A stretch of DNA of 64,000 nt, taken from assembly GCA_030390025.1 (NCBI GenBank), contig CM059430.1:61256001-61320000 (forward strand), read 5' to 3'. Shown here one piece after another: positions 36,586 through 63,006 of the stretch. Each line of letters opens with the position of its first letter. Position 1 is the first letter of the stretch. This stretch comes from Squalus acanthias (Eukaryota). Under the pieces are notes generated by a model, which was not told the DNA's origin, ran no database searches, and saw nothing but the letters and a program-made list of their open reading frames with translations. The translations under genes and the position numbers were made by a program.

Positions 36586-38372
36586 GAATCAATCCTAAAA
36601 TCATGTACCTATCATCACCTCCATCTATGGTCTGCCTGATGACACTTGGGGTTGACTGCATCTCATGGCATCCAAGGAGCATTCTTACTTTTTACATTTA
36701 TCTTAACATAGAGGGCAGCCCATAAGATAGCAAGATGTGTTGACTATAGCTGTGAGGCCTACAACCTCTACCCTCTCATCCCTATGTGGAGAAAGCTTTG
36801 AAACTCCTGGCAACCATCCTTGTGACTTACCCATCAAACGAAGTTAGAAATGGGGAACCAGGAGGACAGGTGCAAGCAGCAGCTTTATGACATTCTGTGC
36901 ATCTTCCTTCTGATGCTATGGTATCATATGTCACCTGTCAGCAAACTAGATCATGAAATGCTCATATCTCTGCTTCTACTGAAAGACACCTTTGAACTCT
37001 GCTCCTTAATAACTCATTCTCACTTCTCTTCTCTTCCTCGTCTAGATGTAACACAGCAAGAAGAGACAGAAGATGATGATATCCACAGCCTTACTTCTTC
37101 TGGCCCTGCTAGCACTTCATTGCACTCATTGTCTCCATACAAAGCACCAGCCCAGAGACATCCACCCAAGGGCATTAGAGAATGATTCTGAGGGCGATGC
37201 CCAGAGAACATAAGAACATAAGAAACAGGAGCAGGAGTAGGCCAGTCGGCTCCTCGAGCCTGCTCCGCCATTCAATAAGATCATGGCTGATCCAATCTTG
37301 TCCTCAACACCACTTTCCTGCTTTCTCCCCATACCCCTTGACTCCCTTGTAGTTCAAATGTCTGTCAATCTCTGCCTTGAATATATTCAATGACTCAACC
37401 TCCACAGCTCTCTGGGGTAGAGAATTCTAAAGATTCACAACCCCCTGAGAGAAGAAATTCCTCCTCATCTCCATCTTAAATGGGAGACCCCTTATTCAGA
37501 AACTATGCCCCCTAGTTCTAGATACCCCCACTAGGGGAAACATCCTCTCAGCATCCACCCTGTCAATCCCCCTCAGAATCTTATATGTTTCAATAAAATC
37601 ACCTCTCATTCTTCTAAACTCCAATGAGTATAGGCCCAACCTGCTCAACCTTTCGTCATATGTCAACCCCTTCATCCCAGGAATCAACCTAGTGAACCTT
37701 CTCTGCACTGCCTCCAATGCAAGTATATCCTTCCTTAAATATGGAGACCAAAGCTGTACGCAGTACTCCAGGTGCGGTCTCACCAACGCCCTGTACAGTT
37801 GCAACAGGACTTCCCTACTTTTATACTCCATTCCCTTTGCAATAAAGGCCAACATTCCATTAGCCTTCCTAATTACTTGCTGTACCTGCATGCTAAGTTT
37901 TTGTGTTTCATGTACTAGGACCCCCAGATCCCTTTGTACCGCAGCATTTTGTAGTCTCACTCCATTTAAATAATAATTTGCTTTTTCATTCTTCCTTCCA
38001 AAGTGGTAACCTCACATTTTCCCACATTATACTCCATCTGCCAAATTTTTGCCCAATCACTTAACCTATCTATATCCCTTTGCAGACTCTTTGGGCTCGA
38101 TTTTGCCAGTGTGGGCGGGCTGGGGCGTGTCAGGTGGCATTCGTGTCAGGACCCCGACTCTGATGTGAAGTGGGGAAAAAGTGCGATTTTCCCCTAATTG
38201 GACACTTGATTTCCAGCGTGTGGGAACCCCTGGCCCAATGTGTCTTTTCATCCAGAAAGTCGCCTCCGATGACGTCATCAATGCTGCTGGATTTAAGGCC
38301 TGCAAGCAGCCTTGCCTCTTCTGGAGACTGCAAACTTTATGGTGATTGTAGTAAGGACTTCATTGATTGACT

Positions 38373-40366
38373 ATGTCCACCAGCAGGCAAAAGTGTGCTC
38401 CACGCTTCGATGAGCCCTCCCTCCAAGCTCTGGTGGAGGGAGCAAGATCGAATAAGGAGGTGCACTTCCCTTCCTCAGGGAGAAAAAAGCCACCCCAGCA
38501 GACTAAAGCTGTGTGGCTGCAAGTGGCCCAGGAGGTCAAGTCCATATCGATGAGCCGCAGAACCTGGCTGCAATGCAGGAAGAGGTTTCATGACCTTCTC
38601 TGCACAGGAAAAGTGAGTATGACTTTCCCATCTCCCTCAATCTGATCCCCATCGCCTCTCCTCACCAGCATACTGCTTTGCTAACCTCTTCCTCCACATC
38701 CCACTTGACACTTACATCCCTGCACCCTTACCCATTGCCTCTCTCTCTATGGTCACATTCACTTAACTATTCGACCATGTAGCCCTCACACTCCCTATCA
38801 CTGTGATGCAACAACAACAACAACTTACAACACACATGGAGGGCCCTTTGTCTCTTTCTAAGCGTCTATGCTATGCATTCTCTACACTCACTCCTTCATT
38901 CTCACTCAAACTCCACTTGTGTCCCTCATTGCAGGAAAAGAGAGCCCACAATAAGAGGGAAAGAGCCATGACAGGAGGAGGGCCACCCTCAGTAGCCCAG
39001 CTCACCACCTGGGAGGAGGTGGCCCTGGCAATCGCCTGGGTCGAGGAGGATTCCCAAGTGGGGGACGGACAGACGGGCGCATCACAGCAAGCTGGTGACA
39101 GAATAGTTTGGCATCTCTATCATTGACATTGCATGAGTCACTGATAATGAATCTGATGCTCTAACAGATTGACTTATGATCATCTGCACTATTCAATGTG
39201 CATGTAACCTTGGCCTCACATCTCTTACTCTTTCCTTTATTTCCCCACAGGACCATCGAAAGCCCCCGTCTCCACTGTCCAGGAGGTAGAGCCTGAGCTT
39301 CCAGACTCCTCAGAGGAATCTGCAACCTCTGAGGGCGCAGTGTCAGCAGAATTCAGCGCACCCAACACCCAGCACCAGCGCAGACACTCACACCTTGGTG
39401 GGACCTTCGCAAGATAGAGTAGTGTCGGCACCTGGTGTATCACAGCTCACAAGTGAGCATCAGCAGATGGTGGAGACAGGGACAGCAGTGGAGAGTCCTC
39501 GTCGGAGGGCGCAGGACTCTGCCAGCTCGGCTCAGCTGCATGTCGACCTTGTGCCTCCAGGTCCATCCAGATGGAGAGTGGTGCTGGAACTCCAGGAACA
39601 GGTGCAGGAGTCTCTGGCAGGTTATGTCTCCAGGGTCGCTGCGAGTGTGGAGCGAATGGAGGAGTCCATCGCGAACATGAGCAGAGCCTTTGTGGAGGCA
39701 TTGGCGCATGAACACATCACCGCGGAAAGGATGGCAACCTCCGTGGAAAGGATGGCTAACTCCGTGGTAAGGCTGGCTACCGTAGAGGAGAGGATGGCTA
39801 CGGTAGAGGAGAGGAAGGCTATGGCCATAGAGGAGCTTAGTCGCCAGGGTCTTGAAAACATGGTCATTGTTCAGAATAGAATGACATCTCTTGAGGAGCG
39901 ATGGTCAGCTATTGAGCATAGAAACCAGACCTTCATGGAAGTCCTCTGGAGTAGGACTTCCAGTGCAGAAACTGGTCCTCATGGCCCCCCTGAGGTGCAG
40001 CAAGGTGCTGTCAAGCCACTTGCTAGCTCTGAGGTGGGGCTGACCCATGAGAGGGATGTTGGTGGCAGACAACAAGGAAGTGCGGGCTCCTCTCCAAGCG
40101 CTCACAAGACCATGCCACTGCAAAGCCCTCGGTCAGAGCCCCACCAGAGTCCTCACCCAACTGAGATGGGCGTCTCAGCCCCTGCACAGCTGCAGGAGCA
40201 GCAGACTGTTGCCAAGCCCTCACAGGCTCGCAACCCCAGAGGACGCCCGCCAAAAGCGTCGAGGCAGGAGCAGCAAGAATGTGAGCAAGGGGCCACCACA
40301 TCTGCTGAAGCCACAGGGGAAGCACCACGTAGGAGCATGCGTAAGAGGAAGATAATGCACAAGTAG
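38373..40366 (+). pseudogene. Harbinger Myb/SANT-like gene, 3 exons (38373-38612, 38935-39094, 39251-40366)
   Basis: KCAPRFDEPSLQALVEG...WLQVAQEV...RTWLQCRKRFHDL, then EKRAHNKRERAMTGGGP. The only lesion seen is a 7-nt duplication near 39361 that shifts exon 3. Confidence 0.88.
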
Positions 40367-40623
40367 TTACAAGGGTAGTCACTTGGGTGCTGTGCTGTAT
40401 CGTATTTGGACCACCCATCCTTGTCATGGTATCATATACAGATTTGATGGCAAACTGTTGAAGTTGTGGCCTGTGTCATTTCACAAATGGAACTTTCACA
40501 TTGAGGGCTTAGGGCGACTTGCAATTGTCAGTATGGTGGTCAGAGTGATAGGAATCCGCAGGTTCTTGTCCATTGTCGATGGTCTGGTAAGAAGGTGTGA
40601 GATAAAAGTGTTTGATTGTGTAG

Positions 40624-40851
40624 GCTAAGCAAATCTGGCCAGAATGAGTGCGTCCCTTGCATCCCGGGCAGCAATGTGGTCGCGCTCTGGCGCCTTCTGG
40701 CCTGTGCAGTTTCAGGTGGGTGAGCAACAGCTTGGCGCTCCTGTTGTTGCTCCTGCTGTTGGTGCTGCTGTTGTTCAAGATTCTGCTGCTGCCGAGGCTG
40801 GTCTTCGTCCGAATCTGATGTCCAGGAGGAAAGGAAATAAATGGTTCCCAT
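40624..40851 (-). pseudogene. Internally deleted HARBI1-like remnant
   Basis: MGTIYFLSSWTSDSDEDQ+polyQ matches the nuclease N-terminus near 34875 (EAVYTVSPWSSESD). DHIAARDARDALILARFA* matches its C-terminus ([18 protein letters not shown]). Confidence 0.75.
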
Positions 40852-41920
40852 GCTTCTGCTATATACCTCAGTTGAGGAAGCACTCAGTCAAGGTGGGGAG
40901 AGGGGTTTCCCAGGAGGTCACACTGGAGATGGGTGTCAGGCTCCAAACTTCCACAACAATGAGTATGCCTGCTAAAAGTTCCCCCAGACCTGAGACAACA
41001 AAGTTCTGCCACCTGCAAATGATGATTGCTGAAAACTCCTTTTTAATGGTGGAGCTGCAACTGTTACTAAGCAATCCACTTGTGAGGCCGCCAGGATTAC
41101 CTGGCGTGTTCCAGAGGAGGCGTGTAGGATGGGGGAAATGTCTAAAAATCAGAAAGGCCTCTCAAAATTAGATTATAGAGGCAATTAAGTGGTTGTTAAG
41201 CACCTTAAGGGCCTAGCGGGATGGAAATGGGATCTAAAACCCCGATTCTGGGAAAATTGCTTGGAGGCGGGATGGAGGTGGGATCGGGCCTGCATGCCAT
41301 TTTTTGCGATTTTAACACCTCACACACCTCCAATCCCACCTCCTCGGGCCTGGGAAAATCGAGCCCTTTGTGTCCTCCTCACAACTTACTAACCCACCTA
41401 TCTTTGTATCATCAGCAAATTTGGCTACAGTACACTCGGTCCCTTCATCCAAGTCATTAATATAGATTGTAAATAGTTGAGGCCCCAGCACTGATCCCTG
41501 TGGCACCCCACTAGTTACTGGTTGCCAACCGGAAAATTACCCATTTATCCCGACTCTCTGTTTTCTGTTAGTTAGCCACTCCCCTAACCATGCTAATATA
41601 TTACCCCCAACTCTGGGCGCTCTTATCTTGTGCAGTAACCTTTTATGTGGCACCTTATCGAATGCCTTCTGGAAATCCAAATACACGACACCTAGAGGAG
41701 CAGGGGGTGGAGGATAATATGACTGAACAGAGGATCTGGCGTCATCACCCTTGGTCACATGTTCCTCAGATAATCCTACTTTCACATTTGTAAAAACTTG
41801 TGCAATATAGTTAGTAGGTATCTGTGCCATTCTCTCACTGCCAATTACCAAATGCCTCCTTTGTTGCTAAGGAACCCAGCCCTTCTTTAACTATCCTTTT
41901 ACTTCTTATAAAAGCACTAG

Positions 41921-42817
41921 GGGGGAAAAATTCAGTATCGCCCCATTTGGGGCGCAATTATCGGCCGGGTGCAAAGATTAGCGCCTGGCGCTAATTATCG
42001 CCTGCGACTGCAAACTTAGCTTTTATCGCCCCTGGAGGTGATTGGAGCGCTAAATCAGGCACTTCACACCTGACTTAAGGCGCAAAGGCCGAGGAGCGAG
42101 GTGCTACCTCAGAGCGCTGGCGAAGCTCATGTGATGTCAGTCAGCAATGGAACAGAGACACAATGGCGCCGGCCAGTTCTTAAAGGGGAGGGTTGATCTT
42201 GCTCTCCATCCACATCCTGCTCATTGCAGCCTTGAATCTCGGCCTGGAGAGACCTGTACATCAAATCTGCTGGAAAGAACAATGGAGAGAACCAGGGAAA
42301 GAGCTCAGAGTGCAGCCCCCACAGTCTCTTCTAAATAGATGCAAGGAAGGGCAAATCAAAATGAACCTGCAAAGTGCTGCTCAGTACCCAAAACTCCTTC
42401 ACACAGTGTTGAATCTCTCCAGAAGTCTCTCTCTCTCTCTCTCTCTCAGAATGCGTGTTGCAAAAATGTCACCAACAAAAAAAGGCAGGAAGTGTTCGCC
42501 TTTAAGTAGCGCTCCCCCAGTCCCTTCCTGACTGCAAAATGCTTCCCTCAACATGTCGTTGCTAGCAGCAGGTGGTAAGGCAGGGGGCGCCACTCAATAT
42601 CCGCTCCGGGGCGCTACCGGGGCGTTGCGCACTCGACTGACGTCATGATCTGCTGGCGCAGGAGATCGTGGCGGTAGTGTTTAGCGCCGCCGCAAAATGT
42701 CTAGTTAATTTCGCGAGCGGCGCAAACATCGCCGCGCCCGAGCGCTAGTTGGTTTGCGCCCCATTAGCGCCCTCTTAAGGCGCTAACGGGAGGCGCAACC
42801 AACTGAATTTTTCCCCC
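41921..42817. mobile_element. Harbinger-type MITE, family A
   Basis: TIRs gggggaaaaattcagt / actgaatttttccccc, TSD TAG. Colinear with 13743-14549. Confidence 0.88.
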
Positions 42818-42849
42818 TAGTTAATTTCCCTTTATGTTGACCATCAGTC

Positions 42850-44545
42850 TTTTAAAGTCTCTTATAGCCTTCCTAGTTGGAAATCTAGTGGACTGGGAGA
42901 GCTATGAGAAGCAACAAAGGGATACAAAGAAAATAACAAGAGCTGCCAAATGGGTGTATGGAAAAAAACTTGTAAGGAATATCAAAACTAACAGTAAAAT
43001 CTTTTCAAAATAATAATGTTGAGAAAGTGAATGTTGAGGGAGAATGTGGTCCCATTAAAGACAGATGCAGGTGAGACTGTAATGGATAATAGGTAAATGG
43101 CAGACTTGTTAAATGAATACTTTGTATCCATTTTCACACTAGAGGAAGAGAACAAAATACCAGTGGTACAAGGGAACCTAAAAATAAGTCAAGGAGAGGA
43201 ACATAATGGATTTAATATCAGTAAAAAAAATGGTAATGATGAATGAGACTTAAGATAGACAAATCTCTAACACCTGATGGTTTCCACCAATATTAAAAGA
43301 AACAGGTGATGAAATTGCAGATGCATTAGTCATAATTTTCCAAAGCTTTCTAGATTTGGGAATTGTGCCTTTGGTTTAGAAAATGGCAAATGTCACTCCA
43401 TTATTTAAGAGGGGAGGGAGAAACTGAGAAATTACAGACCTTTGAGTTTAACGTCAAATATGGGGAAGTTACTAAAATCTGCCATGAGGGACAAAGTGAC
43501 TGAGCACTTGAGTGTGTGCTGCGAGGAGGATACCGAGAAACTCCAGGATGTTTTGGACAGGTTGGGTGAGTGGGCAGAAGCGTGGCAGATGCAATATAAC
43601 ATGGATAAATGCGAGGTTATCCACTTTGGTGTCAAAAACAGAAAGGCAGACTATTATCTGAATGGCAATAGATTGGGAGAAGGGGAAGTGCAACGAGACC
43701 TGGGTGTCCTTGTGCACCAGTCGCTGAAGGCAAGCATGCAGGTGCAGCAGGCGGTGAAGAAGGCAAATGGTATGTTGGCCTTCATAGCGAAAGGGTTTGA
43801 GTATAGGAACAGGGATGTCCTGCTGCAGTTGTACAGGGCCTTGGTGAGACCACACCTTGAGTATTGTGTGCAGTTTTGGTCGCCTTATCTGAGGAAGGAT
43901 GTTCTTGCCATGGAGGGAGTTCAGCGAAGATTCACAAGGCTGATACCTGGGATGGCAGGAATGACATATGAGGAGAGATTGGATCGATTGGGCTTATACT
44001 CGCTGGAGTATAGAAGAATGAGAGGGGATCTCATCGAAACATATAAAATTCTGACAGGTCTGGACAAACTAGATGCAGGAAGAATGTTCCCGATGGTCGG
44101 AGAGTCCAGAACCAGGGGTCATAATCTAAGGATAAGGGGTAAGCCATTTAGGACAGAAATGAGGAGGAATTTCTTCACCCAGAGAGTGGTGAACCTGTGG
44201 AATTCTCTACTACAGAAGGTAGTTGAGGCCAAGTCATTAAATATATTCAAGAATGAGTTTGATATATTTCTTAAAGCTAAAGGTATCAAGGGATATGGGG
44301 AGAAGGCAGGTACAGGGCACTGAGTTTGGATGATCAGCCATGATCTCATCGAATGGCGGAGCAGGCTCGAGGGGCCGAATGGCCTACTCCTGCTCCTATC
44401 TTCTATGTTTCTATAATGTATAAGCTGATCAAAGGGTGTCAGCAGGATTCGTGAAGTGTAAGTCATGTCTGACTAAGCTAGCTGAATTTTTTGATGAGGT
44501 CAGTAATGTGGTTGACTTGGGAGTGTCTCTGGCTGTTGTCTATAT
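42850..44545 (+). mobile_element. Old CR1 (42850-43512, 44414-44545) containing a younger 5'-truncated CR1 (43513-44413)
   Basis: ORF 43442-44323 is chimeric. The young part matches the 19303-20295 subfamily and ends in ctatgtttctat. Confidence 0.85.
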
Positions 44546-44547
44546 AT

Positions 44548-48746: not shown

Positions 48747-48767
48747 CTGATGGAGATTTAAAATAAC

Positions 48768-49529
48768 AGGCCAGAAATTCAGCTTTCCGGCTTCCTGCGG
48801 GTGCAAGCATTGCGCGCGTACTTGCCTACCGCGCCTGCAGTTGTGCTTTGGGCCCATGAGGACTTCGGGTCCAGGGCCTCCTGCAGCTGCCGGCGTGCAG
48901 TGCTTGTGTATCCCAGGGGCGCAGTTAGTTCGAAGCGTCCCCTGGGATCACGTGGGCCATTGAGAGCCAATCCTAGCAGGGCATTTTCATTCATAGATTT
49001 GACAGGAAGACCTATCAAATCTATGAATAGAGATCGGCCCCAAAACTACACTTAAACTTCAAATAAATTTAAAAAAAAATCACATTTTTAAAATAACTAT
49101 AAGTTAAATAAATTAACTACTTTAAACAAAAATTTAAATTTAAAAAAAAATTAATTATACTTTGTAACGGTGCTAAAAATAAACTTACCTTTCTTTAAAG
49201 TATCTAAAAAAGATAAACCTGTTGAAATTTTTTTTACATTGTAATTAATTAACCACTTACCTTGTTAAAAACAGGCCTTGCGCCTCCTTTTTAAAAGCGC
49301 AGCTTCTTCATACTTACCTTCCCGGAGAAACCTGAAAAAAAATCAAAGTTCGCTGTGTGCGCGCAGCCTCTCCCGCACACGCGTTCGACTTCTGAACCCC
49401 TCCCTTCAGGGGAACGGAAGTTCCGGTTTCCTGCGCATGCGCAGTGCATGCAGGAAACCGGCACTTCAGATGGCCTTACGGGTGAGTACACAGCGCATAG
49501 TCACCCGACAACAGCCGAATTTCTGGCCC
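48768..49529. mobile_element. Harbinger-type MITE, family C
   Basis: TIRs aggccagaaattc / gaatttctggccc. Inverted homolog at 51563-52311. TSD unclear. Confidence 0.8.
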
Positions 49530-49986
49530 CTACACCCCATTCCTTTATGTGCTCGAATATATCTTCAGGTTAGCTTTCAACATAATTTATCGAAAATCTT
49601 TTAATTTGTCTTCTTTGTAGTTTATTTTATAAGTTAAAACCTTCCAAGCCTTTCCTTCATAGAGTCCATTATGTGATATCGAAACACGTCTGTCTCTTAC
49701 AATCATACGTTAAATACGCGAAAGAATTGGATGGGCAAAATTTTGGCGCGGCTCGTCCCTCCCAGCACGACTTTCTACCTGGCTGAATTCATCCTCAGCG
49801 GGAAAACCACCCACATTTCAGGTCATCTCACTTTGACATAGGCGCTTTTGGTTTTGACTTATATGTAATCGAGGGCATTCGTTTAAAAAAAACTTTTGTG
49901 AACCTTACACTGTCAGAAATGTTAAAACGGGAGAAAAACTGATTCATCGTTTGGAAAAATCTAGACAAATTTCCTTTTGAGCAACC

Positions 49987-50240
49987 TTAGAATCTTACAG
50001 CACAGAAGGAAGCCATTCGGCCCATCACGTCTGTGCCGGCTCTTTGCAAGAGTGATCCAATTAGTCCCACTCCCCTGCTCTTTCTCCCTAGCCCTGCAAT
50101 GTTTTCATTTACAAGTATATATCCCATTCCCGACTGAAAGTTACTACTGAATCTGCTTCTACCACCCTTTCAGGCAGTGCATTCCAGATTACAAAAACTC
50201 GCTGCGTAAAAACAAATTCTCCTCGTCTCCCCTCTGGTTC
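49987..50240 (-). mobile_element. CR1 3' end fragment
   Basis: tagaatcttacagcacagaagg...ccattcggccc tail. Confidence 0.75.
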
Positions 50241-50580
50241 TATAACTATAAATCGTTAACTTATCCTCTCTTCCTATTCCACCTTAACCTTTTAGCATGT
50301 ATTTACAAACCAGGCATAGTCACTGGGCAGGAGTTCCCAATAATTGTAAATAATGGAAATAAGGAGAGTGGGAAGTGACAATGGGGCGAACGTTGCTGAT
50401 GAAGTGAAGGGATTTGGTCAGTGCAATGTGTGATCGGAGATTGTAAACACACCAGACTTTACTGGTACTGGAGCGGTATCTGCTGGCTAATTCGTGTTAG
50501 CGCGTAGATTGAGCTCAGTCTGACATGCAGCCACAACCTGCTTTAAAGAGGATACGCTCCCTGAGTAGTTAAATTTCATT

Positions 50581-51282
50581 TGCCCGGATTTTGCGCTCTT
50601 GATGACGTAAGCCATCAGAAAGGCCTCACAAGTTCCAGGTTTCCGCATGCGCTGCACATGCGCGAAAACCCAGAATTTGCGATCTGTCAAGATACGCCTT
50701 GACAGATCTACCGCACCGACCCAAAAATCACTTTACTTGACGCAAAGTTGGGCAACTACTGCCCAGAAAATCCCCACAAAACCCTTACAGCTGGTAAAAC
50801 AGCGTAAGAGTTAATATAAATCTTAAATTAAAAAATTAATAAAAAGTCATTGACATTTAAAATCAGTTTATGTAACTTTTAGCCCAAGATTAAAATGTTT
50901 AAAATTATTCTTCAAAAAAATTATTTTTTATTGTATATACTTTATTGAAAGGACTTTTAAATTAAATTTGAAAATGGGAACTTTTATTTTGATTCCAGTT
51001 GTATAAATTATTTAATTATTTGGGGATTCCATTCGTAAATGGAATCCCCAGAAGCACATTAGGAATCCTCCTTTCTGATTGGAGGACCTGGCCCACGTGA
51101 TCCCAGGGACGCTCCGAACTGTCTGCGTCCTTGGGATCCGTGCGCCTTTACACAGGCGAACGCCTGCAGGCCCAGGACCCGAAGTCTCTGAAGCCCGGGA
51201 GCCTGAAGGTAGGTGCAGAGTTTTTTTTAATCGGGTCGGAGGCGTACTCCGGAGGTACGCCTCTGACCACAAATTCTGGGCC
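50581..51282. mobile_element. Harbinger-type MITE, family B (inverted relative to 30074)
   Basis: Colinear with the reverse complement of 30074-30785. Right TIR aaattctgggcc. Confidence 0.8.
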
Positions 51283-51562
51283 AACGTTAGAAGAATGGGA
51301 GAGAGTGAAGGGGCATTGATTCATTGCTGTAGATTCTGCGTGAAGTCTTCAGAAGTTCAATGGGATACTTGGGCACTATTAAATTGCAGCTTCCGACCAC
51401 AGTCAAGTTATACTGCAGACGGTGTGTATCAAACTACCCGAAAACAATTTTATAAAAACGCTGAAAAAGTGCTGGCAGTGGTTATGGGGAATTACAAAGC
51501 CAAGAATCCAATACGTTTTTTAACTGCCTCATCAACTTACCCTGCCACTTTCAGCTTGAAAT

Positions 51563-52311
51563 GAAATTCGGGTCTCCATGGGTGAGTACGCGCTGTGTAC
51601 TCACCCGTAGACACAACGAAAGTGCCGGTTTCGCGCATGCACTGTGCATGCGTGGAAACCGGAACTTCCGTTCCCTTGAAGGAAGGGGTTCGGAGGTCAA
51701 ATGTGTGCGCCGGAGAAGCAGCGCGCATGCATCGAACTTCCGCTTTTTTTTCAGGTTTCCCCGTGAGGGTAAGTCCCTGGCAGCTGCGCGGGGAAAAAGC
51801 AGGTGCAAGGCCTGCTTTTAACAAGGTAAGTGGTGAATTAAGTGAAAGTTAAACATTTTTGCCACAGGTTTATCTTTTTTAAATACTTTAAAGAAAGGTA
51901 AGTTTATTTTTAGCCCTGTTAAAAACTGTAATTAATTTTTTCAAAAATTTAAATATTTGCTTAAAATAGTTAATTTATGTAATTTATAGTTATTTTAAAA
52001 ATGAGATTTAAAAAAAAAATTTATTTGAAGTTTTAGTAAGGTTTTGGGGGGTGATCTCTATTCATAGATTTGACAGGTCTTCCTGTCAAATCTATGAATG
52101 GAGATTCCCTGCTTCGATTGGCTCTCCATGGCCCACGTGATCTCAGGAGACGCTTCGAACTAACTGCGCCTCTGGGATACGCAAGCACTGCACACTGGCA
52201 GCTGGAGGAGGCCCAGGACCGGAATACCACGCGGGCCCACAGCACAACGGCAGGCGCGCTAGGTAAGTGAAGGTCGGGGGCTTGCACCCGCGGGAACCGA
52301 ATTTCTGGCCC
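51563..52311. mobile_element. Harbinger-type MITE, family C, left TIR clipped
   Basis: Right TIR gaatttctggccc. Left end retains only gaaattcgg. Confidence 0.8.
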
Positions 52312-52404
52312 AAGAAGTGGAAGAATAGTGTCGCTTAATTTAATTGGAGGGGGAGACTTGTGCCAGGTTGGATTAACACGGAGAGAATTGCCATATGAAG
52401 TGAA

Positions 52405-53091
52405 TGTAAGATTATCATGGATTTGCTGGTTTCTAGAATACTTGTTTTAATATCTTATAATCATTAATATCTTCTAATCATTAGTATCTTATAATCAGCA
52501 GAAATGGATTTATAATCGCGTGTAAGAACTAAAAGTAGAAGTCTGTAATCATCAATTGTACGCAATGATAACCTGAATTATATATGACATGTAACCCTTT
52601 TGCTTATAATTAAAAGACTGTGAGTAAGTGGTATCCCAGACAGCCTGGGGTGAGAAAGTGAACTTCTACAGCGTGAGTCTCCGTGGATCCCGAGGCAGAA
52701 GGCAAGTTCGTAGATTTTTGCCGGTCGGAGGCATTCACCCGTGGGAAGCCTCCGACCGCAAATTCAGGCTCCATAGGTTTCGAATGAGAGTAAGGGTATA
52801 AGAAGGGGGGCTCAACAGCCACAAGATGTAGAAGATTTCAGGAAGAATCAAGGAGACACCTGAGAGACAAAGAGTGAAGATGGACAAGAGACACAGGGTG
52901 CAGTTTACTTACGATTGCGGCTTCTACCCAGAGGTTAACGGGGTAATGTAAGTCTGAATTATGCTGTGTAAACTGCTACATGAATATTGTAATGTATTAA
53001 GTCCTGTTTGTGCTGAATAATGTTAAATCACAGTCCCCAATATGTGTCAACCTCGAATCATTTGGGACTATGGACCCTCTGGGATCTTACA
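52405..53091 (+). mobile_element. LTR of an LTR retroelement (contains a family-B MITE end at 52672-52771)
   Basis: Inverted termini TGTAAGAT...ATCTTACA, TATA-like box at 52797, PBS 3 nt downstream. Confidence 0.75.
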
Positions 53092-53094
53092 AAT

Positions 53095-55973: not shown

Positions 55974-58340
55974 GACACCGCCAAACAGACGAGGCAACGG
56001 AACTACGCTACCTACATGCGCATCAAGAACAGGAAGCTTGAGAAACTCGGCGTAACCACCAGCTACAACCAAGCCTCCCCCGGTACCACGGTTGCAACCA
56101 CAGGGAAGTCCATCGTCAACCTGTCGGACCACACCCTTCAACCAGACGAAATCGAAGTTCTCGCCCTAGGGCTCAAGTTCTGCCCCACCACCAAAATGGA
56201 CCCCATCGGTCTCGCGGCGGACACAGAGGAATTCATCAGGAGAATGAGGATCCGGGAATACTACCACAAATCCCAAGATGTCAGCAACATTCCTAATGGG
56301 ACAATCAATGATCCGGAACAGCAGACAGAGGGAACTGCAGTGCTGCAACCGAGGAAGAAAGAGTCAAATTGGACCCTTCCGGAGGGTCGCAACCCTAAGC
56401 TTGACATGTATGCTCAAGCTGTCAGGAAATGCATCAACGCCAGATTCATCAGCCGTACTCACAAGACAGTCCAGAATGTCACCCGAGCACAACGCAACGC
56501 CATCCACGCACTCAAGACCAACCGCAACATCGTCATCAAACCAGCGGACAAAGGAGGAGCCATCGTCATACAGAACAGAACGGACTATTGCAAAGAAGCA
56601 TACCGACAACTGGACAACCAGGAACACTACAGACAGCTACCCGCAGATCCGACCAAAGAACACACCCGCCAACTCAATAGACTGATCAAGACCTTCGATC
56701 CAGACCTTCAAAACATCCTACGCGCTCTCATCCCACGTACTCCCCGCGTAGGAGACTTTTACTGCCTCCCAAAGATACACAAAGCCAACACACCCGGACG
56801 TCCTATCGTATCAGGCAACGGAACCCTGTGTGAGAACCTCTCTGGGTACGTCGAGGGCATCCTGAAACCCATCGTACAGGGAACCCCCAGCTTCTGTCGC
56901 GACACTGCAGACTTCTTGCAGAAACTCAGCACCCATGGACCAGTTGAACCAGGAACACTCCTCGTCACAATGGACGTATCGGCACTCTACACCAATATCC
57001 CCCACAATGACGGCATCGCTGCGACAGCCTCAGTACTCAACACCAACAACAGCCAATCTCCGGACGCCATCTTACAACTCATCCGCTTCATCCTTGACCA
57101 CAATGTCTTCACCTTCGACAACCATTTTTTCACCCAAACACATGGAACAGCCATGGGGACCAAATTCGCACCCCAATACGCCAACATCTTCATGCACAAG
57201 TTCGAGCAAGACTTCTTCGCTGCACAGGACCTCCAACCAACGCTGTACACCAGATACATCGACGACATCTTCTTCCTTTGGACCCACGGCGAAGGATCAC
57301 TGAAAGGACTACACGATAGCATCAACAGGTTCCATCCCACCATCAAACTCACCATGGACTACTCCTCAGAATCGGTTTCATTCTTGGACACACGAATCTC
57401 CATCAAAGACGGACGCCTCAGCACTTCACTCTACCGCAAGCCCACGGACAACCTCACGATGCTCCACTTCTCCAGCTTCCACCCTAACCACGTTAAAGAA
57501 GCCATCCCCTATGGACAAGCCCTGCGAATACACAGGATCTGCTCAGACGAGGAGGAACGCGATGGACACCTACGGACACTGAAAGACGCTCTCGTAAGAA
57601 CGGGATATGACGCTCGACTCGTCGATCGACAGTTCCGACGGGCCACAGCGAAAAACCGCATAGACCTCCTCAGAAGACGAACACGGGACACAACCAACAG
57701 AGTACCCTACGTCGTCCAGTACTTCCCCGGAGCGGAAAAACTACGCCATGTTCTTCGCAGCCTTCAACATGTCATCGATGACGACGAACACCTTGCTAAG
57801 GCCATCCCCACGCCTCCACTACTCGCCTTCAAGCAGCCGCCTAACCTCAAAAGTACCATCGTTCGCAGCAGATTACCCATCTTTCAGGAGAACAGCAACC
57901 AAGACACCACACAACCCTGCCACGGCAACCTCTGCAAGACATGCCAAATCATGGACACAGATACCATCATTACACGTGAGGACACTACCCACCAGGTACA
58001 CGGTACATACTCATGTGACTCGGCCAACGTTGTCTACCTGATACGTTGCAGTAAAGGATGCTCCAGAGCATGGTACATCGGCGAGACCATGCAGACACTG
58101 AGACAACGTATGAACGGACACCGCGCAACAATCGCCAGGCAGGAGGGTTGCCTCCCAGTCGGGGAACACTTCAGCAGCCAGGGGCATTCAGCCTCGGATC
58201 TGCGGGTAAGCGTTCTCCAAGGCGGCCTTCGAGATACACGACAGCGCAAAATCATAGAGCAGAAACTGATAGCCAAGTTCCGCACTCATGAGGATGGCCT
58301 CAATCGCGATATCGGGTTCATGTCACGATACAGAACGTGA
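55974..58340 (+). CDS. Penelope-like RT + GIY-YIG endonuclease ORF, 5' truncated but uninterrupted
   Basis: IKPADKGG, LPKIHK..PGRPIVS, DVSALYT, GTAMG, RYIDD. Linker CX4CX2C. VVYLIRC..C..WYIGET plus two His. Frame is open from the junction (first ATG 56016). Confidence 0.95.
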   Translation, partial: DTAKQTRQRNYATYMRIKNRKLEKLGVTTSYNQASPGTTVATTGKSIVNLSDHTLQPDEIEVLALGLKFCPTTKMDPIGLAADTEEFIRRMRIREYYHKSQDVSNIPNGTINDPEQQTEGTAVLQPRKKESNWTLPEGRNPKLDMYAQAVRKCINARFISRTHKTVQNVTRAQRNAIHALKTNRNIVIKPADKGGAIVIQNRTDYCKEAYRQLDNQEHYRQLPADPTKEHTRQLNRLIKTFDPDLQNILRALIPRTPRVGDFYCLPKIHKANTPGRPIVSGNGTLCENLSGYVEGILKPIVQGTPSFCRDTADFLQKLSTHGPVEPGTLLVTMDVSALYTNIPHNDGIAATASVLNTNNSQSPDAILQLIRFILDHNVFTFDNHFFTQTHGTAMGTKFAPQYANIFMHKFEQDFFAAQDLQPTLYTRYIDDIFFLWTHGEGSLKGLHDSINRFHPTIKLTMDYSSESVSFLDTRISIKDGRLSTSLYRKPTDNLTMLHFSSFHPNHVKEAIPYGQALRIHRICSDEEERDGHLRTLKDALVRTGYDARLVDRQFRRATAKNRIDLLRRRTRDTTNRVPYVVQYFPGAEKLRHVLRSLQHVIDDDEHLAKAIPTPPLLAFKQPPNLKSTIVRSRLPIFQENSNQDTTQPCHGNLCKTCQIMDTDTIITREDTTHQVHGTYSCDSANVVYLIRCSKGCSRAWYIGETMQTLRQRMNGHRATIARQEGCLPVGEHFSSQGHSASDLRVSVLQGGLRDTRQRKIIEQKLIAKFRTHEDGLNRDIGFMSRYRT

Positions 58341-58560
58341 CTTGACATCATGGCCGGTCTTCCCAGGTGTTTTTTTTTTTTTTTAAAAAGGCTAACACAA
58401 GAACACAAATTGACAGGATATGCAGCCAGCAGGTGGTTTGACACGTTGGACCCCCTGGGACACATCTCATTGTCTTGGCTGTGCTCTTTGTTGTAGCGAA
58501 TAATGTGAATAGATTTTGTCTGGGTTTAAATTGTGAATTCTGGGAGATTCTCTCATTGCT

Positions 58561-58605
58561 AACTTACCTGACGAAGGAGCGACAGCTCCGAAAGCTTGTA
58601 AAATT
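58561..58605 (+). ncRNA. Minimal type I hammerhead ribozyme motif (plus arm)
   Basis: ttac-CTGACGA-a-ggagc(gaca)gctcc-GAAA-gctt-gtaa: core boxes, stem II, palindromic AAGCTT stem III and stem I ttac/gtaa. Penelope-like elements are known to carry such motifs. Confidence 0.75.
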
Positions 58606-58975
58606 AAATAAATCTGTTGGACTATAACCTGGTGTTGTGCGACTTCTCATTTTTGTCCACCCCAGTCCAACGCCGGCATCTCCACATCAGAAAATAATAG
58701 AGAGGGAGAAGGAATGCCAGCAACTAGAAACCAGGAATCTGGGAACTCAGCAAATGAAGGAAAAAAAACAAGGAGTTAGAGAACCAAAACAAGCTGCTGA
58801 GACGACAGTTCAAAATGCAAAAGAAAAGGAACTGAAAGTTGAAAGCAGAACTGAAGTTGTTGGTAAATGCTGTCAACTTCTGTGCCGAGAAAAACAAAAC
58901 ACAAAAATTACTGAGTGAAAGGAAGCTGAAAGGATGCTGGAATTTAACTTTGTGTGAAAGTGTGAAAGTGTGAAA

Positions 58976-59005
58976 CCCTAACCCTAACCCTAACCCTAAC
59001 CCTAA
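58976..59005 (-). repeat. Interstitial telomeric repeat (TTAGGG)5
   Basis: Five perfect ccctaa units preceded by (gtgtgaaa)3. Confidence 0.9.
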
Positions 59006-59357
59006 AGTTTGGAACTTTTCCTGACTATGAATGTTTAAGAAGTCATAGCATTTCTTTTGTCTGAAAGTCTGTCTTTAGAAAGTGTCTGCTATGTTTGTTT
59101 TAGCGCCACCCACAGTTCTGTGCACTGAGCCATTCTACCCTTTGTAGTCTTGTTTCTCATGTTGGAAGTATTAAGCATTTGTAATTAATGTCTTTCTTAA
59201 CGTGTGCTGTTTTAAGTTTGTTAATTGATTTATTGTATGTATACACATGTGTATTATTTGTGAGATATTTGAGTCATGTTTTTGGTTTTTGAACTGATTC
59301 AAACTTTGTGAACAGGCTCGCAACCTGGGATTATCAGGAAAAAAATCAGCACTCTTG

Positions 59358-60597
59358 TGCGTTACCCAGCCCAATTAAATGGTGCGGGTCTGGTGACGTC
59401 ATTGATGACATGTTTTCAGCTGGGATATTTAAAGGAGCCATGGCCACATTGCATTTGAAGGTTCATCTAGGAGTGTGCAGGTCGTGCACTTCATTATTCC
59501 ACTGCTGCACACACCACCAGAAATGACTGCACAGAGGCAGAGGGCTGCACCCAGGTTCTCCGATGACTCCCTCCATATGCTTGTGGAAGGAGTCAGAGCA
59601 CACAGGGATGTCCTCTTCTTTGCTGATGGGAGGAAGAGACCTCCTAAGCAGAGCAAAGTAGCCTGGCTCCAAATAGCAGAGCAGGTGAATGGCAGGGATG
59701 TCATACTGAGGACCTGGCTGCAATGCTTTAAATGCGTCAACGATCTTGTTAGATCCAGAAAGGTGAGTACAAAGCCACACTTACCTTCATCCTGCTGTGC
59801 CTCTCATCACATCCCCATCACTCTGCCTTCCCAACCCTACTGCTGCACATCCTTACTCACACCAACATACCTTGCACCTCCACCCATCCCTCTCTCTCTA
59901 TCTACATTATCACATCCCCATCTTACTCATCACCACTCACACTCACCCTCATCCTAATGCAATCATGCTAACTAACAACACACAAGGAGGCCACTTGGAA
60001 TTGCCACCCCAATCCATTCTCGTCACCCTCTACAGAGGTAACCCATCCATTTCCTACACTCATTCCATCACACTCACTCAACCTTCTCTTCTTTCCCTCC
60101 TTGCAGAAAAGAGAGTCCACAATAAGAGTGAGAGGGAGAGAACTGGTGGTGGAGCCCAATCAGTGGTCACCATGACCACAGCAGAGGAGGCTGCCTTAGA
60201 GATGGCGGGAGTCGCCAAGCACCCAGAGGTGGGAAACAGAGAGAGGGGGACATCTCAGCAACCTGGGGACAGAATTACATATCATACAGCTACATGGCAC
60301 ACATCAGTCACTCATATGTGGGCTGATGTCAGCAGCCATTGAGTGGTCATTATGTGTATAAGGTCTCTGTACCCAATCTACATATGAGATATTTAACTCA
60401 TCTCTTTACTCTTCCACAGGTCCATCAAGAGCCACCACCACTGTCCAGGAGCAAGAGGAAGGCGACTCCTTAGAGGAGCCTCCAGCCTCTGAGGGCGCAC
60501 CATCACCAGACAGAAGCGCACCCAGCACCAGCGCAGATACTCACACCTTGGTGGGTTCCTCGCGAGATAGAGTAGTGTTGTCACCTGGTGTGTCACA
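59358..60597 (+). mobile_element. Truncated Harbinger fragment with Myb/SANT pseudogene (exons 59523-59762, ~60107-60265, 60420-60597)
   Basis: Colinear with 31288-32537. RAAPRFSDDSLHMLVEGV...RTWLQC. Exon-2 donor mutated, no TIRs. Confidence 0.88.
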
Positions 60598-60610
60598 AAT
60601 CACAACCGAA

Positions 60611-60891
60611 CCACATGAAGTGAATGTAAGATTATCATGGATTTGCTGGTTTCTAGAATACTTGTTTTAATATCTTATAATCATTAATATCATATAATCA
60701 ACAGTATCTTATAATCAGCACAAATGGATTTATAATCGCGTGTAAGAACTAAAAGTAGAAGTCTGTAATCATCAATTGTACGCAATGATAACCTGAATTA
60801 TATATGACATGTAACCCTTTTGCTTATAATTAAAAGACTGTGAGTAAGTGGTATCCCAGACAGCCTGGGGTGAGAAAGTGAACTTCTACAG
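60611..60891 (+). repeat. Second copy of 52391-52671 (14 nt of flank plus first 267 nt of the LTR)
   Basis: Near-identical direct repeat at offset 8220. Confidence 0.92.
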
Positions 60892-61242
60892 TCAAATAGG
60901 GAAGCTGTGGGTAAAAGTTGGATATTAGCCAACAGTAAGGATGAGGCACAGAGTGCAGCTAGACTGGGAACGAACATTTCAAATTATTGGAATGTTATGA
61001 TTTTCTGCAGTGAGTTAAAAACAGAGGCCTTTCACAGGACCAGCAAGGCAGTGTATCTCTACAGTATGGAGACATGTTCTTTTGTGTTGCCATAACTGCC
61101 CCAGATATGAGTCTTGATGGTCAAAAACAGATGATGTAAGGGGGGTCATAAGACTAGAACCTGCGCAAGCCAAGATGCTGCAGATGTGGCATCTTTTAGA
61201 TTGGATTTTGGATTTTAGGTTTTGGGTCTAAGCCAGTGATTG

Positions 61243-63006
61243 AACATAAGAAATAGGAGCAGGAGTCGGCCATTCGGCCCCTCGAGCCTGCTCCGCCATT
61301 CAATAAGATCATGGCTGATCTGATCTTGGCCTCAACTCCTTCCCTGGCTGTTCCCCATAACCCTTGACTCCCCTGTAGCTCAAATATCTGTCTATCTCCG
61401 CCTTGAATATATTCACTGACTCAGCCTCCACAGCTCTGTGGGGTAGAGAATTCCAAAGATTCACGACCCTCTGAGAGAAGAAATTCATTCTCATCTCCAT
61501 CTTAAATGGGCGACCCCTTATCCTGAAACTATGCCCCCTAGTTCTAGATTTCCCTGACGAGGGAAAAACATATTCTCAGCATCTACCCTGACAAGCCCCC
61601 TCCGAATTTTATATGTTTCAATAAGATCACCTCTCATTCTTCTAAACTCCAATGAGTATAGGCTTTCATCTCAGGAATCAACCTAGTGAACCTTCGTTGA
61701 ACACCCTCCAATGCAAGTATATCACTCCTTAATTAAGATGACCAAAACTGTACACAGCACTCCAGGTGTGGTCTCACCAATGCCCTGTACATTTTATCCT
61801 CCATCCCCCTAGCCATGAAGGCCAACATTCCAATTGCCTTCCTAATTACTTGTTGTACCTGCATGCTTACTTTTTGTGTTTCATGTATGAGGACACCCAG
61901 ATCCATCTGTACCACAGCATTCTGTAGTCTCGCCCCATTTAAATAATATTTTGCTTTTCTATTCTTCCTACCAAAGTGAATAACCTCACATTTTCCCACA
62001 TTATACTGCATCTGCCAAATTTTTGCCCAGTCAATTAACCTATCTATATCCCCTTGCAGACTCTTTGGGCTGGATTTTTACAGCCCTGGAGAGGTGTGTT
62101 TGGAGGCGGGACTGCCGGGAAAATGGCAGAATTTGGGGGCGGGTGCCCAACCCACCCCCAAACCGCCACCATACCATCTTGCCAGGAAGCGGGTAGCAGT
62201 CCCGCGCCGGGTCCCGTCTCCTTGGATGCGGCAAGGGATTACAGCCACGTAACTGCCATTTAACAGGTAGTTAACAGGCAGAAAATAGGATTATCACCAT
62301 TTTGCCCACACAAGTGTGGGCTTCCCGAAGGCTCCGAAACTCGCCAGGGTCACAGAGGCAAGTAGTGGGACTTCGGGGATCGGAGGGGTCCAAAAGTGTG
62401 CTTTGGAGGTGAGTGATGGGTGCAAGTGTGGAGAAGTGAGTATCTGAGGCAAGTGCAAAGTGTTAGAAAAAGTGTACTTACCTTTTTTTTCTTCCTGCAG
62501 GCTTCAATCAGTGGGTATGCAGAGAGTCTCACACCGCTGCGGTAGAGAGGACAGATGGCCATTGCATTCTCCAATGCAGCAACCATCTAATTTCTACAAA
62601 AGAAAGAGGTTTGATGAGGTCTTGAATTCAAGAACTCATAAAACTACAGAGAATGTCAATGTTTGACAGTTTCACAGAGCTGTCAAACGATGACAATTCA
62701 TCTGGCAAAACATTTTGACAGATGAAACGTCATACGTTGACATTCTCTGTAACCGGCTTTCCCTTAATTGGCCTGCTATGCCCGCTGGGCGGGCTTAACA
62801 AGGTCAATCAAGGGAAAATAGCGTGGGTGGGCCAGAAGTTGATGGAGGCGGGACTGAAACCCGACAAGTGGGAGTCCTGCCTCCAAAAGCACCCCATTGG
62901 CAAAATCCAGGCCTTTGTGTCCTCATCAATACTTGCTTTCCTACCTATCTTTGTATCGTCAGCAAATTTGGCTACAGTACACCCTGTGGCACCCCGCTAG
63001 TTACAG
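61243..63006 (-). mobile_element. CR1 LINE split by a MITE (pieces 61243-62066 and 62914-63006)
   Basis: ORFs 61309-61500 and 61733-62011. Rejoins as gcagactc-TTT-gtgtcctc. Confidence 0.9.
62067..62913. mobile_element. Harbinger-type MITE related to the 38093 element, opposite orientation
   Basis: TIRs gggctggatttt / aaaatccaggcc, TSD TTT. Confidence 0.88.

What the first reader, a model, noticed from the sequence alone, without database searches (positions are those of the whole stretch)
38082..62924. Two different Harbinger elements hit the identical nucleotide of two CR1 copies, in opposite orientations
Seen: the 3274-bp element (38093-41366) and the 847-bp element (62067-62913) both sit in gcagactc-[TTT]-gtgtcctc within the RT region of minus-strand CR1 copies, each duplicating TTT. 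A third copy is empty there (agattc-TTT-gagtcc, 18925-18927). The left end of the small element resembles the reverse complement of the right end of the large one and vice versa, so orientations are opposite, which argues against copying of one ancestral insertion. Known: Harbingers make 3-bp TSDs, and zebrafish Harbinger3_DR prefers a ~15-bp palindromic target (recalled as AAACACCWGGTCTTT). Inference: this DNA transposon lineage uses a high-copy LINE as a recurrent landing pad, which gives it a safe harbour and breaks the CR1 RT frame at each hit.
Basis: partly seen in the sequence, partly recalled or inferred. Interest (0 to 1): 0.85.

Follow-up and report, generated by a model that had tools for sequence, protein, structure and literature searches.

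The report
Two Harbingers hit one CR1 site
Two different cut-and-paste (Harbinger-type) transposons landed independently, in opposite orientations, at exactly the same nucleotide of two old LINE copies in a cartilaginous-fish genome, most likely because this transposon family chooses a long specific target sequence that the LINE happens to carry in many copies.

Summary
E1 (38093-41366) and E2 (62067-62913) have GGSCTSGATTTT inverted ends. Each is flanked by a duplicated TTT at the same nucleotide of two minus-strand CR1-type LINE copies. A third copy (18925-18927) is empty.

The two hits are independent and inverted:
- The LINE copies are separate retrotransposition products, with the same octamer tail but different 5' truncations.
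- E1 and E2 share only about 127 nt at one end, and that end lies on opposite sides.

E1 is a Harbinger that kept its Myb gene and lost the DDE core. E2 is a non-coding MITE. A relative, E3 (31159-35027; Myb plus frameshifted DDE_Tnp_4), made an AAA/TTT duplication in unique DNA with a partly similar flank.

Best reading: this is the ordinary extended, near-palindromic target choice of PIF/Harbinger, with the target carried by a high-copy LINE. 'Safe harbour' and 'breaks the RT frame' are not supported. The copies were already 5'-truncated, and same-site hits can only be noticed inside repeats.

Other first-stage notes on other pieces of this genome report similar CR1 hits; I did not check them.

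The parts
37209..38089 (-). CR1-type LINE copy A, 3' part (downstream of the insertion in LINE sense), ending in a (TTCTTATG)n tail
   Evidence: It is 86.0% identical over 885 bp to copy C and 83.0% over 882 bp to copy B. The tail was read. A 154-aa ORF at 37496-37960 has 1287 relatives at E<=1e-10, including bird CR1-like proteins at about 50%.
38090..38092 (.). TTT target-site duplication, left copy, of E1
   Evidence: The empty paralogue has a single TTT.
38093..41366 (+). E1: 3274-bp non-autonomous Harbinger. It has TIRs GGGCTCGATTTT (15 of 16 end bases match) and a Myb/SANT ORF at 38367-38645, and the DDE core is deleted.
   Evidence: TIR and TSD scan. Pfam Myb_DNA-bind_5 at 6.4e-8. The Myb exon is 59% identical to that of E3. 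E1 aligns to E3 on both sides of E3 33713-34729, with only 10 bp in between.
41367..41369 (.). TTT target-site duplication, right copy, of E1
41370..41694 (-). LINE copy A, upstream part (RT region), 5'-truncated at about 41694
   Evidence: Homology to three other copies stops at 41653-41694. P0023 aa 3-79 aligns to 41596-41366.
61242..62063 (-). LINE copy B, 3' part
62064..62066 (.). TTT duplication, left copy, of E2
62067..62913 (-). E2: 847-bp non-coding MITE with TIRs GGGCTGGATTTT / GGCCTGGATTTT, inverted relative to E1. Its left end is homologous to the right ends of E1 and E3.
   Evidence: There is no similarity to E1 or E3 outside the ends. Its interior is multi-copy in four public runs.
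62914..62916 (.). TTT duplication, right copy, of E2
   Evidence: Contig joints that skip exactly 850 = 847+3 bases are, table 5.
62917..62982 (-). LINE copy B, upstream part, 5'-truncated at 62982
18048..19211 (-). LINE copy C, with the empty site at 18925-18927
31159..35027 (+). E3: 3869-bp two-gene Harbinger of a related family. It has TIRs GGCCAGAATTTT / GGCCGGAATGTT and an AAA duplication at 31156-58 and 35028-30. The Myb ORF is at 31405-31851 (+). The DDE_Tnp_4 transposase is in frameshifted pieces at 33656-34448 (-), plus an N-terminal piece at 34566-34961 (-). It lies in unique DNA.
   Evidence: (DDE_Tnp_4 at 1.7e-15 and 3.1e-10; Myb_DNA-bind_5 at 1.8e-12).
41263..41271 (+). GGAGGCGGG subterminal box in E1. 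The same box occurs at 62102-62110 and 62844-62852 in E2 and at 34984-34992 in E3. It is a candidate binding site for the Myb protein.
   Evidence: All 4 of the 4 window matches lie within about 105 bp of an element end. 0.28 matches are expected, and 0 of 100 shuffles reach 4. The boxes line up in the end alignment.

Best explanation
Two separate transposition events put two different non-autonomous members of one PIF/Harbinger lineage into the same target sequence. That sequence is present by descent in many copies of one CR1-type LINE subfamily.

Inferred mechanism:
- The Myb-like ORF1 protein binds subterminal boxes (TTTGGAGGCGGGAC-like, about 30-45 bp from the ends) and brings in the DDE transposase.
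- The complex recognises a near-palindromic target (half-sites of the type GAC-C on either side of TTT), cuts it with a 3-nt stagger and duplicates the TTT.
- Because the half-sites are nearly symmetric, either orientation is possible.
- The LINE is hit repeatedly because it multiplies the motif across the genome, not necessarily because it is a LINE.

Shown: identity of the site, the duplication, independence of the events, inverted orientation, family membership, and shared subterminal boxes.

Inferred: which protein reads the target, the exact extent of the motif, and trans-mobilisation of E1 and E2.
For: - The same nucleotide and the same TTT duplication occur at both sites, and a paralogue is empty.
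- The LINE copies are independent retrotranspositions. They share one 3' end with a (TTCTTATG)n tail but have 5' ends 328, 69 and 287 bp upstream of the site.
- The E1 and E2 interiors are unrelated, and the one homologous end lies on opposite sides.
- Copy A is closer to the empty copy C (86.0%) than to filled copy B (83.0%).
- Harbinger identity rests on Myb_DNA-bind_5 in E1 and E3 and DDE_Tnp_4 in E3, with HARBI1-family neighbours in the Atlas.
- The GGAGGCGGG box is confined to element ends.
- Six LINE copies in the window cover the position. Three carry TTT, and 2 of those are filled. Three from another subfamily carry TCA or TCG, and 0 are filled.
- E3's unique-DNA site shares 9 of 20 flanking positions with the LINE site, including GA at -5/-4 and GTC at +3 to +5.
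- Chance is about 2e-5 to 2e-4.
- In public runs, one 216-nt contig (X1, record 6, 81% identity, no gap) bridges a paralogous LINE into an E2-like end at the same junction. Contigs that skip exactly 850 bases show empty sites: 4 in X2, 1 in X15, 0 in X1 and X16.
- Literature passages state that PIF/Harbinger has extended target preferences of 9 bp in plants and 15 bp in vertebrates, that excision is precise and that ORF1 binds the ends. Another passage says Harbinger3_DR is 'highly specialized' for a 15-bp palindrome.
Against: - Only two distinct target sequences are available (the LINE site and E3's site), so the motif is a guess. 9 of 20 shared positions is only weakly above the 5 expected.
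- The degenerate pattern GAYNY-TTT-RNRTC was derived from the occupied sites, so its rarity (2 intact matches, 0.52 expected) is circular. One of those two matches is the empty copy C, which fits yet is unoccupied.
- 2 of 3 against 0 of 3 is not significant.
- No genome-wide flank census could be made.
- The only transposase gene in the window (E3) is frameshifted, and its ends differ from those of E1 and E2 at 4 of 12 terminal bases.
- A TTT duplication departs from the TWA given for the PIF/Harbinger group.
- One contig (X16, record 24) ends its match 3 nt before E2's right end and runs on 409 letters unaligned. Some family members therefore may sit in other contexts, or in LINE copies below the 80% threshold.
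Confidence: 0.8

Rival explanations
1. Evolved LINE specialist. The lineage has become a true target-specific transposon whose niche is fixed positions of CR1. Its target recognition is kept matched to the LINE because landing in dead repeats is harmless (a safe harbour), in the manner of Dada in tRNA/snRNA genes or Pokey in rDNA.
For: - 2 of 3 TTT-bearing copies in 64 kb are occupied.
- A third filled paralogue appears in a public run (record 6).
- Five unchecked first-stage notes on other pieces of this genome report Harbinger or MITE hits at identical nucleotides of CR1 copies or tails.
- The concept is established for other DNA transposons (passages of PMC8869645).
Against: - E3 sits in unique DNA.
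- Ascertainment: same-site hits are visible only in repeats.
- The occupancy of motif instances outside CR1 is unknown.
- The notes report several different CR1 positions, which fits a short motif recurring in an abundant repeat as well as it fits specialisation.
- Nothing was measured genome-wide.
Confidence: 0.15
2. One ancestral filled LINE copy was duplicated, either as DNA or by retrotransposition of a LINE carrying the insert, and gave rise to both filled sites.
For: The 8 bases on each side of the TTT are identical at the two sites.
Against: - The inserts are not homologous apart from the ends, and they are inverted.
- The LINE copies have different 5' truncation points.
- Copy A is closer to the empty copy C than to copy B.
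Confidence: 0.02
3. Coincidence under a weak preference for TTT or AT-rich DNA only.
For: PHIS-superfamily elements share a preference for AT-rich targets (passages).
Against: With 3414 TTT/AAA triplets in the window, the chance of such a pair is about 2e-4. A further filled paralogue exists in a public run.
Confidence: 0.03

Closest known systems
Harbinger3_DR / Harbinger3N_DR of zebrafish (Sinzelle et al. 2008; seen only through passages of PMC3016246 and PMC2836001, because the paper itself is not held)
   Same: Both are two-gene vertebrate Harbingers (Myb-like ORF1 plus DDE transposase) with non-autonomous derivatives, a 3-bp duplication and a long palindrome-like target. In Harbinger3_DR, ORF1 binds the ends.
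   Different: The target and duplication differ: CWG at the centre of AAACACCWGGTCTTT there, TTT between GAC-C-type half-sites here. Here the target sits inside a LINE. No activity has been shown here.
Maize PIF / mPIF and rice Ping/Pong/mPing
   Same: All show an extended target preference beyond the 3-bp duplication, MITEs that share TIRs and subterminal sequence with the autonomous element, and precise excision (passages). Repeated hits at one site of the maize r locus are known to me only from the title of Walker et al. 1997 in reference lists and from recall.
   Different: Those are plant elements with a TTA/TAA duplication and a 9-bp target. Their target is not carried by a LINE.
Dada (tRNA/snRNA genes), Pokey (28S rDNA) and CryptonV (microsatellites): target-specific DNA transposons (PMC8869645, abstract and passages)
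   Same: DNA transposons that repeatedly enter the same nucleotide of a multicopy sequence. The safe-harbour logic is the same.
   Different: They belong to different superfamilies. Their exclusivity for the target is documented genome-wide, whereas here it is untested and E3 shows a non-LINE site.
Spy elements (PHIS superfamily; PMC4122938, abstract and passages)
   Same: They are related to the PIF/Harbinger transposases, and AAA/TTT is involved at the target. The 'paralogous empty site' logic is the same as used here.
   Different: Spy inserts between AAA and TTT without any duplication. Here a single TTT at the empty site becomes TTT on both sides.

Membership tests
PIF/Harbinger superfamily | DDE transposase of the DDE_Tnp_4 / Plant_tran type | tested here: met
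   E3 pieces score 1.7e-15 and 3.1e-10 against PF13359, and their Atlas neighbours are HARBI1-family clusters. The gene is frameshifted. E1 has the core deleted and E2 has no such gene.
PIF/Harbinger superfamily | Second gene with a Myb/SANT-like DNA-binding domain | tested here: met
   Myb_DNA-bind_5 scores 6.4e-8 in E1 and 1.8e-12 in E3. The two are 59% identical.
PIF/Harbinger superfamily | 3-bp target-site duplication | tested here: met
   TTT lies on both sides of E1 and E2, AAA on both sides of E3, and a single TTT in the empty paralogue. Contig joints skip 850 = 847+3 bases.
PIF/Harbinger group in the narrow sense of the PHIS paper (PMC4482050) | Duplication of sequence TWA | tested here: not met
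   The duplication here is TTT/AAA. The passages list TWA, ANT (Pangu), CWG (NuwaI), TNA (NuwaII), AT (ISL2EU) and none (Spy). The paper's supplementary family tables could not be seen and may hold exceptions.
PIF/Harbinger superfamily | Extended target preference beyond the duplication | tested here: inconclusive
   Only two distinct targets are available. They share 9 of 20 flanking positions.
Tourist-like MITE (E2) | Short, non-coding and multi-copy, with TIR, TSD and subterminal sequence shared with a Harbinger | tested here: met
   E2 is 847 bp, which is longer than the 100-500 bp quoted, and has no Pfam-bearing ORF region. Its ends are homologous to those of E1 and E3. In each of four runs, 32 to at least 128 distinct contigs carry variants at interior positions (table 3).
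NuwaI / Harbinger3_DR-like | CWG duplication | tested here: not met
   The duplication is TTT.
Spy | Insertion between AAA and TTT with no duplication | tested here: not met
   The empty site has one TTT and no AAATTT.
CR1-clade LINE (the host repeat) | RT-encoding non-LTR element with 5'-truncated copies and a short (8-nt) repeat tail instead of poly(A) | tested here: met
   The RT frame with its FADD box is aligned to P0023, P0006 and P0106, which carry PF00078. The tails are (TTCTTATG)n. The 5' ends vary. That the octamer tail marks CR1 is recalled, not looked up.
CR1-clade LINE (the host repeat) | Phylogenetic placement of the RT within CR1 rather than L2 or Rex1 | not tested
   The only evidence is about 50% identity to heron and crane proteins, which the sources name merely 'hypothetical protein' or 'reverse transcriptase'.
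Target-specific transposon in the strict sense (Dada/Pokey/R2-like) | Nearly all copies in one multicopy target | tested here: inconclusive
   2 of 3 complete elements in the window are in the LINE site and 1 of 3 is in unique DNA. A genome-wide count was not possible.

The most novel reading that the evidence does not exclude
A shark Harbinger lineage with an unusual TTT duplication is a true LINE specialist. Most of its thousands of copies sit at a few fixed nucleotides of CR1, in both orientations, and its target recognition has tracked the LINE sequence. That would make it the first PIF/Harbinger example of the niche strategy known from Dada, Pokey and R2, and a natural DNA transposase with a roughly 15-20-bp address.
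Probability: 0.15. Interest if true: 0.65.

Novelty: new member of a known kind. Interest (0 to 1): 0.35.

Why it matters
Long, specific integration targets are rare among eukaryotic DNA transposases and are sought as tools. [quoted passage not shown]

A lineage with a new address (TTT between GAC-C half-sites) would be a compact system for asking which of the two Harbinger proteins reads the target. It comes with a built-in natural experiment: thousands of LINE copies carry variant versions of the site, some filled and some empty. It also shows how one repeat family shapes where another accumulates.

As it stands, the window documents one clean instance of a property already known for this superfamily.

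Tried and rejected
Dead ends:
1. I tried to gather more copies through proteins. The 323-aa E1 ORF found 0 relatives. An E2-to-LINE junction ORF of 92 aa found 0.
2. The search for related loci on metagenome contigs gave 80 loci at 34-73% protein identity, mostly from one sample. None has DNA similarity to E1, E2 or E3, and the only LINE-site matches are 28-44-nt scraps. They were useless for the question.
3. I looked in the 120 stored LINE proteins for a TIR-derived peptide in front of the site. 8 of the 120 reach the site and 0 of those 8 carry it.
4. Read laying gave only the best-supported rows (24 of 4405 loose ends, 32 of 214483 pieces). The fraction of family ends that abut the LINE therefore could not be counted. 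No loose end at the two junctions is among the rows shown, which proves nothing.
5. The search of earlier findings by sequence returned nothing.
6. The fragment at 59356-60605 (78.7% identical to E3) has no recognisable ends, so it gives no fourth site.
7. I rejected a candidate element at 48875-52213 with a 'CAG duplication'. Its flanks continue the inverted repeat, so CAG is not a duplication.
8. Four papers are not held: PMC2290759, PMC60043, PMC139471 and PMC1208007. Two searches listed no paper whose title or abstract start describes Harbinger-in-CR1 targeting in cartilaginous fish or a TTT duplication in Harbingers; I did not open those papers. Supplementary files were not opened because they are closed. 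The family tables of PMC4482050 may bear on the TTT point.

Full report
OBSERVATION.
- E1 (38093-41366, 3274 bp) begins GGGCTCGATTTT and ends with its reverse complement. TTT stands at 38090-92 and again at 41367-69, between gcagactc and gtgtcctc.
- E2 (62067-62913, 847 bp) begins GGGCTGGATTTT and ends AAAATCCAGGCC. TTT stands at 62064-66 and 62914-16, between the same two octamers.
- A third copy of the host repeat reads gattc-TTT-gagtcc at 18925-27 with nothing inserted.
- A scan for GGSC...GSCC ends with at least 12 of 16 matching bases and an identical 3-nt flank returned five pairs. Three of them are E1, E2 and a third element, E3.
- The window has no N.

THE HOST REPEAT. The flanks are copies of one LINE family on the minus strand.
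- Copy A is 37209-38092 plus 41367 to about 41694. Copy B is 61242-62066 plus 62914-62982. Copy C (empty) is 18048-19211.
- All three end at the same 3' point in a (TTCTTATG)n tail. They start at different points, 328, 69 and 287 bp upstream of the site. They are therefore separate, 5'-truncated retrotransposition products.
- Identities over about 880 bp are A-C 86.0%, A-B 83.0% and B-C 78.7%.
- A 154-aa ORF of copy A has 1287 relatives at E<=1e-10. The best named ones come from Chiloscyllium (68%) and Callorhinchus (78% over 75% of the query). Heron and crane proteins match at about 50% over 99%. This is a CR1-type LINE of a cartilaginous fish; I did not build a tree.
- The Callorhinchus RT-domain protein P0023 aligns unbroken over the empty copy (aa 6-241) and is split at about aa 79 at both filled sites, some 15 codons after FADD. 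The site is in the RT frame, 884 bp from the LINE's 3' end.
- Both hit copies lacked most of the RT and everything upstream before or regardless of the hit. 'Breaking the frame' therefore has no consequence for them.

THE INSERTS.
- E3 (31159-35027) has ends GGCCAGAATTTT / GGCCGGAATGTT, and AAA on both sides (31156-58, 35028-30). Its Myb_DNA-bind_5 ORF is on the plus strand (1.8e-12). Its DDE_Tnp_4 transposase is on the minus strand in two overlapping frameshifted pieces (1.7e-15, 3.1e-10). Atlas neighbours are HARBI1-family clusters. It is a two-gene Harbinger, but not an intact one.
- E1 aligns to E3 at 66-80% identity in five blocks. It skips E3's 33713-34729, the DDE core, with 10 bp in its place. 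Its Myb exon (Pfam 6.4e-8) is 59% identical to E3's. E1 is an internally deleted, non-autonomous relative from another family.
- E2 has no similarity to E1 or E3 except at the ends. It is a MITE.
- The three elements share more than the terminal 12 nt. E1-right, E2-left and E3-right align over about 70 nt (48/70, 48/70 and 44/70 identical), including a TTTGGAGGCGGGAC-like box.
- The core GGAGGCGGG occurs 4 times in the window, each within about 105 bp of an end of E1, E2 or E3. 0.28 matches are expected, and 0 of 100 shuffles reach 4.

INDEPENDENCE AND ORIENTATION.
- E2 1-127 matches E1 3274-3149 on the opposite strand (68%, E 5e-5).
- End-against-end scores give z=13.4 for E1-right versus E2-left and z=11.0 for E2-left versus E3-right. 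E1-left versus E2-left gives z=2.4 and E1-right versus E2-right gives z=3.9.
- So E2 is inverted relative to E1.
- The interiors are unrelated, the LINE truncation points differ, and copy A is closer to the empty copy than to copy B. Together these rule out descent from one filled ancestor.

CHANCE. With three such elements and six LINE copies covering the position in 64,000 nt, a same-nucleotide pair has a probability of about 2e-5 under uniform insertion. If only the 3414 TTT/AAA triplets are eligible, it is about 2e-4 (a rough model of my own).

THE TARGET.
- The two filled sites are identical for 8 nt on each side of the TTT. The left octamer and the reverse complement of the right one agree at 5 of 8 positions (G..GAC.C), which makes a loose palindrome (read).
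- Six LINE copies in the window cover the position. A, B and C carry TTT, and 2 of these are filled. D, E and F belong to a younger subfamily (90-95% identical to each other); they carry TCA or TCG, and 0 are filled. The numbers are too small for significance.
- E3 lies in DNA that is unique in the window for about 190 bp on the right and at least 370 bp on the left. Its flanks, read on the TTT strand, share 9 of 20 positions with the LINE site, where 5 are expected. The shared positions include GA at -5/-4, C at -1 and GTC at +3 to +5.
- A degenerate pattern drawn from the occupied sites has 2 intact matches in the window against 0.52 expected. One is the empty copy C. This is circular and only shows that the pattern is rare.

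BEYOND THE WINDOW.
- Twenty public runs hold parts of 61600-63100, all as Logan contigs. I laid four of them (coded organisms A, A, D and E) at 80% likeness: 33670, 42414, 68826 and 68974 records were laid.
- E2's interior is covered by many distinct contigs in all four runs, so the MITE family is multi-copy and shared by these organisms.
- At 29 of the 40 listed variant positions that fall inside E2, nearly all the depth carries another letter than the window copy. This copy is therefore not young.
- Joints that skip exactly 850 bases (E2 plus one TTT) occur in 4 contigs of X2 and 1 of X15, and in none of X1 or X16. Further joints carry the intact target with variant right flanks. Empty sites with this target therefore exist.
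- One contig (X1, record 6, 216 nt) runs from the LINE flank (128 nt) into an E2-like end (79 nt) without a gap at 81% identity. This is a third, paralogous filled site in E2's orientation. I cannot say whether it is an independent hit or an old duplicate.
- One contig (X16, record 24) stops matching 3 nt before E2's right end and runs on for 409 letters. It is a family member in another context, or in a LINE copy below the threshold.
- The output lists only the best-supported rows, so no fraction can be given.
- Every other route to more copies failed or was closed.
- Five first-stage notes on other pieces of this genome report Harbinger or MITE hits at identical nucleotides of CR1 copies or tails, and one proposes a SWC-WWW-GWN site. 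The LINE site here fits that pattern (CTC-TTT-GTG), while E3's site does not fit fully. These notes are unchecked leads, and I saw only their titles.

MECHANISM.
- Most likely (0.8), the Myb-like protein binds the subterminal boxes and recruits the DDE transposase. The complex picks a near-symmetric target, cuts it with a 3-nt stagger at TTT and inserts in either orientation. E1 and E2 are moved in trans.
- The roles of the two proteins are taken by analogy from passages on Harbinger3_DR and Ping/Pong. They were not tested here.
- The LINE matters because it copies the motif across the genome at a position close enough to its 3' end to survive 5' truncation.
- A stronger version holds that the lineage is an evolved LINE specialist. 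It stays open at about 0.15.

COMPARISON AND NOVELTY.
- Extended target preference (9 bp in plants, 15 bp in vertebrates), MITEs that share ends with autonomous elements, and precise excision are stated features of PIF/Harbinger.
- Using a paralogous empty site inside another repeat is standard practice.
- Two things are less usual. First, the duplication is TTT; the passages I saw list TWA, ANT, CWG, TNA, AT or none for the PHIS groups. Second, the target is carried by a LINE.
- Two searches listed no paper whose title or abstract start describes either point for cartilaginous fish. Repbase and the supplementary tables could not be consulted.
- I therefore file it as a new member of a known kind.

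LIMITS.
- There are only two distinct target sequences, no genome-wide census and no intact transposase in the window.
- The species is not identified beyond 'cartilaginous fish', and the CR1 clade assignment is not tested by phylogeny.

Noticed in passing
window 30074-30785: A 712-bp MITE-like element with ends GGCCCTGAATTT / GGGCCAGAATTT (12 of 16 matching) is flanked by AAT on both sides, 370 bp upstream of E3. Its ends resemble E3's, but the duplication differs and would fit the ANT type listed for Pangu elements. A similar internal sequence seems to recur near 51012-51284, judged by eye from ORF translations.
   Followed up: partly
window 48840-52250: A long inverted repeat has arms of at least about 130 nt: the first 16 bases match at 15 of 16, and the similarity runs on both inside and outside 48875/52213. 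It encloses about 3.3 kb that holds other repeats. The apparent 'CAG duplication' is part of the arms. The true ends were not found.
   Followed up: partly
window 59356-60605: A fragment of a fourth Harbinger, 78.7% identical to E3 positions 128-1388 (the Myb-gene side), has no recognisable ends. It lies 640 bp from LINE copy B.
   Followed up: partly
window 62609-62751 (inside E2): Two adjacent internal palindromic stretches lie at 62609-62644 (89% self-complementary) and 62645-62751 (70%). Another first-stage note on this genome speaks of hairpins in a Harbinger MITE family.
   Followed up: no
window 60611-60891 and 52391-52671: A 281-bp direct repeat is 97.9% identical, far younger than the LINE copies around it.
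   Followed up: no
window 19211-20852, 43513-44414, 63095-64000: Three copies of a second, younger CR1-type subfamily are 90-95% identical to each other and about 72% to copies A-C. Their sequence at the homologous position is TCA or TCG instead of TTT, and all are empty there. Copy D starts exactly where copy C ends (19211).
   Followed up: partly
window 36233-36560: A tandem repeat of roughly 113 nt (73-90% between units) lies just outside LINE copy A. One frame gives a repetitive ORF (SPNVCSDSPIQKI...).
   Followed up: no
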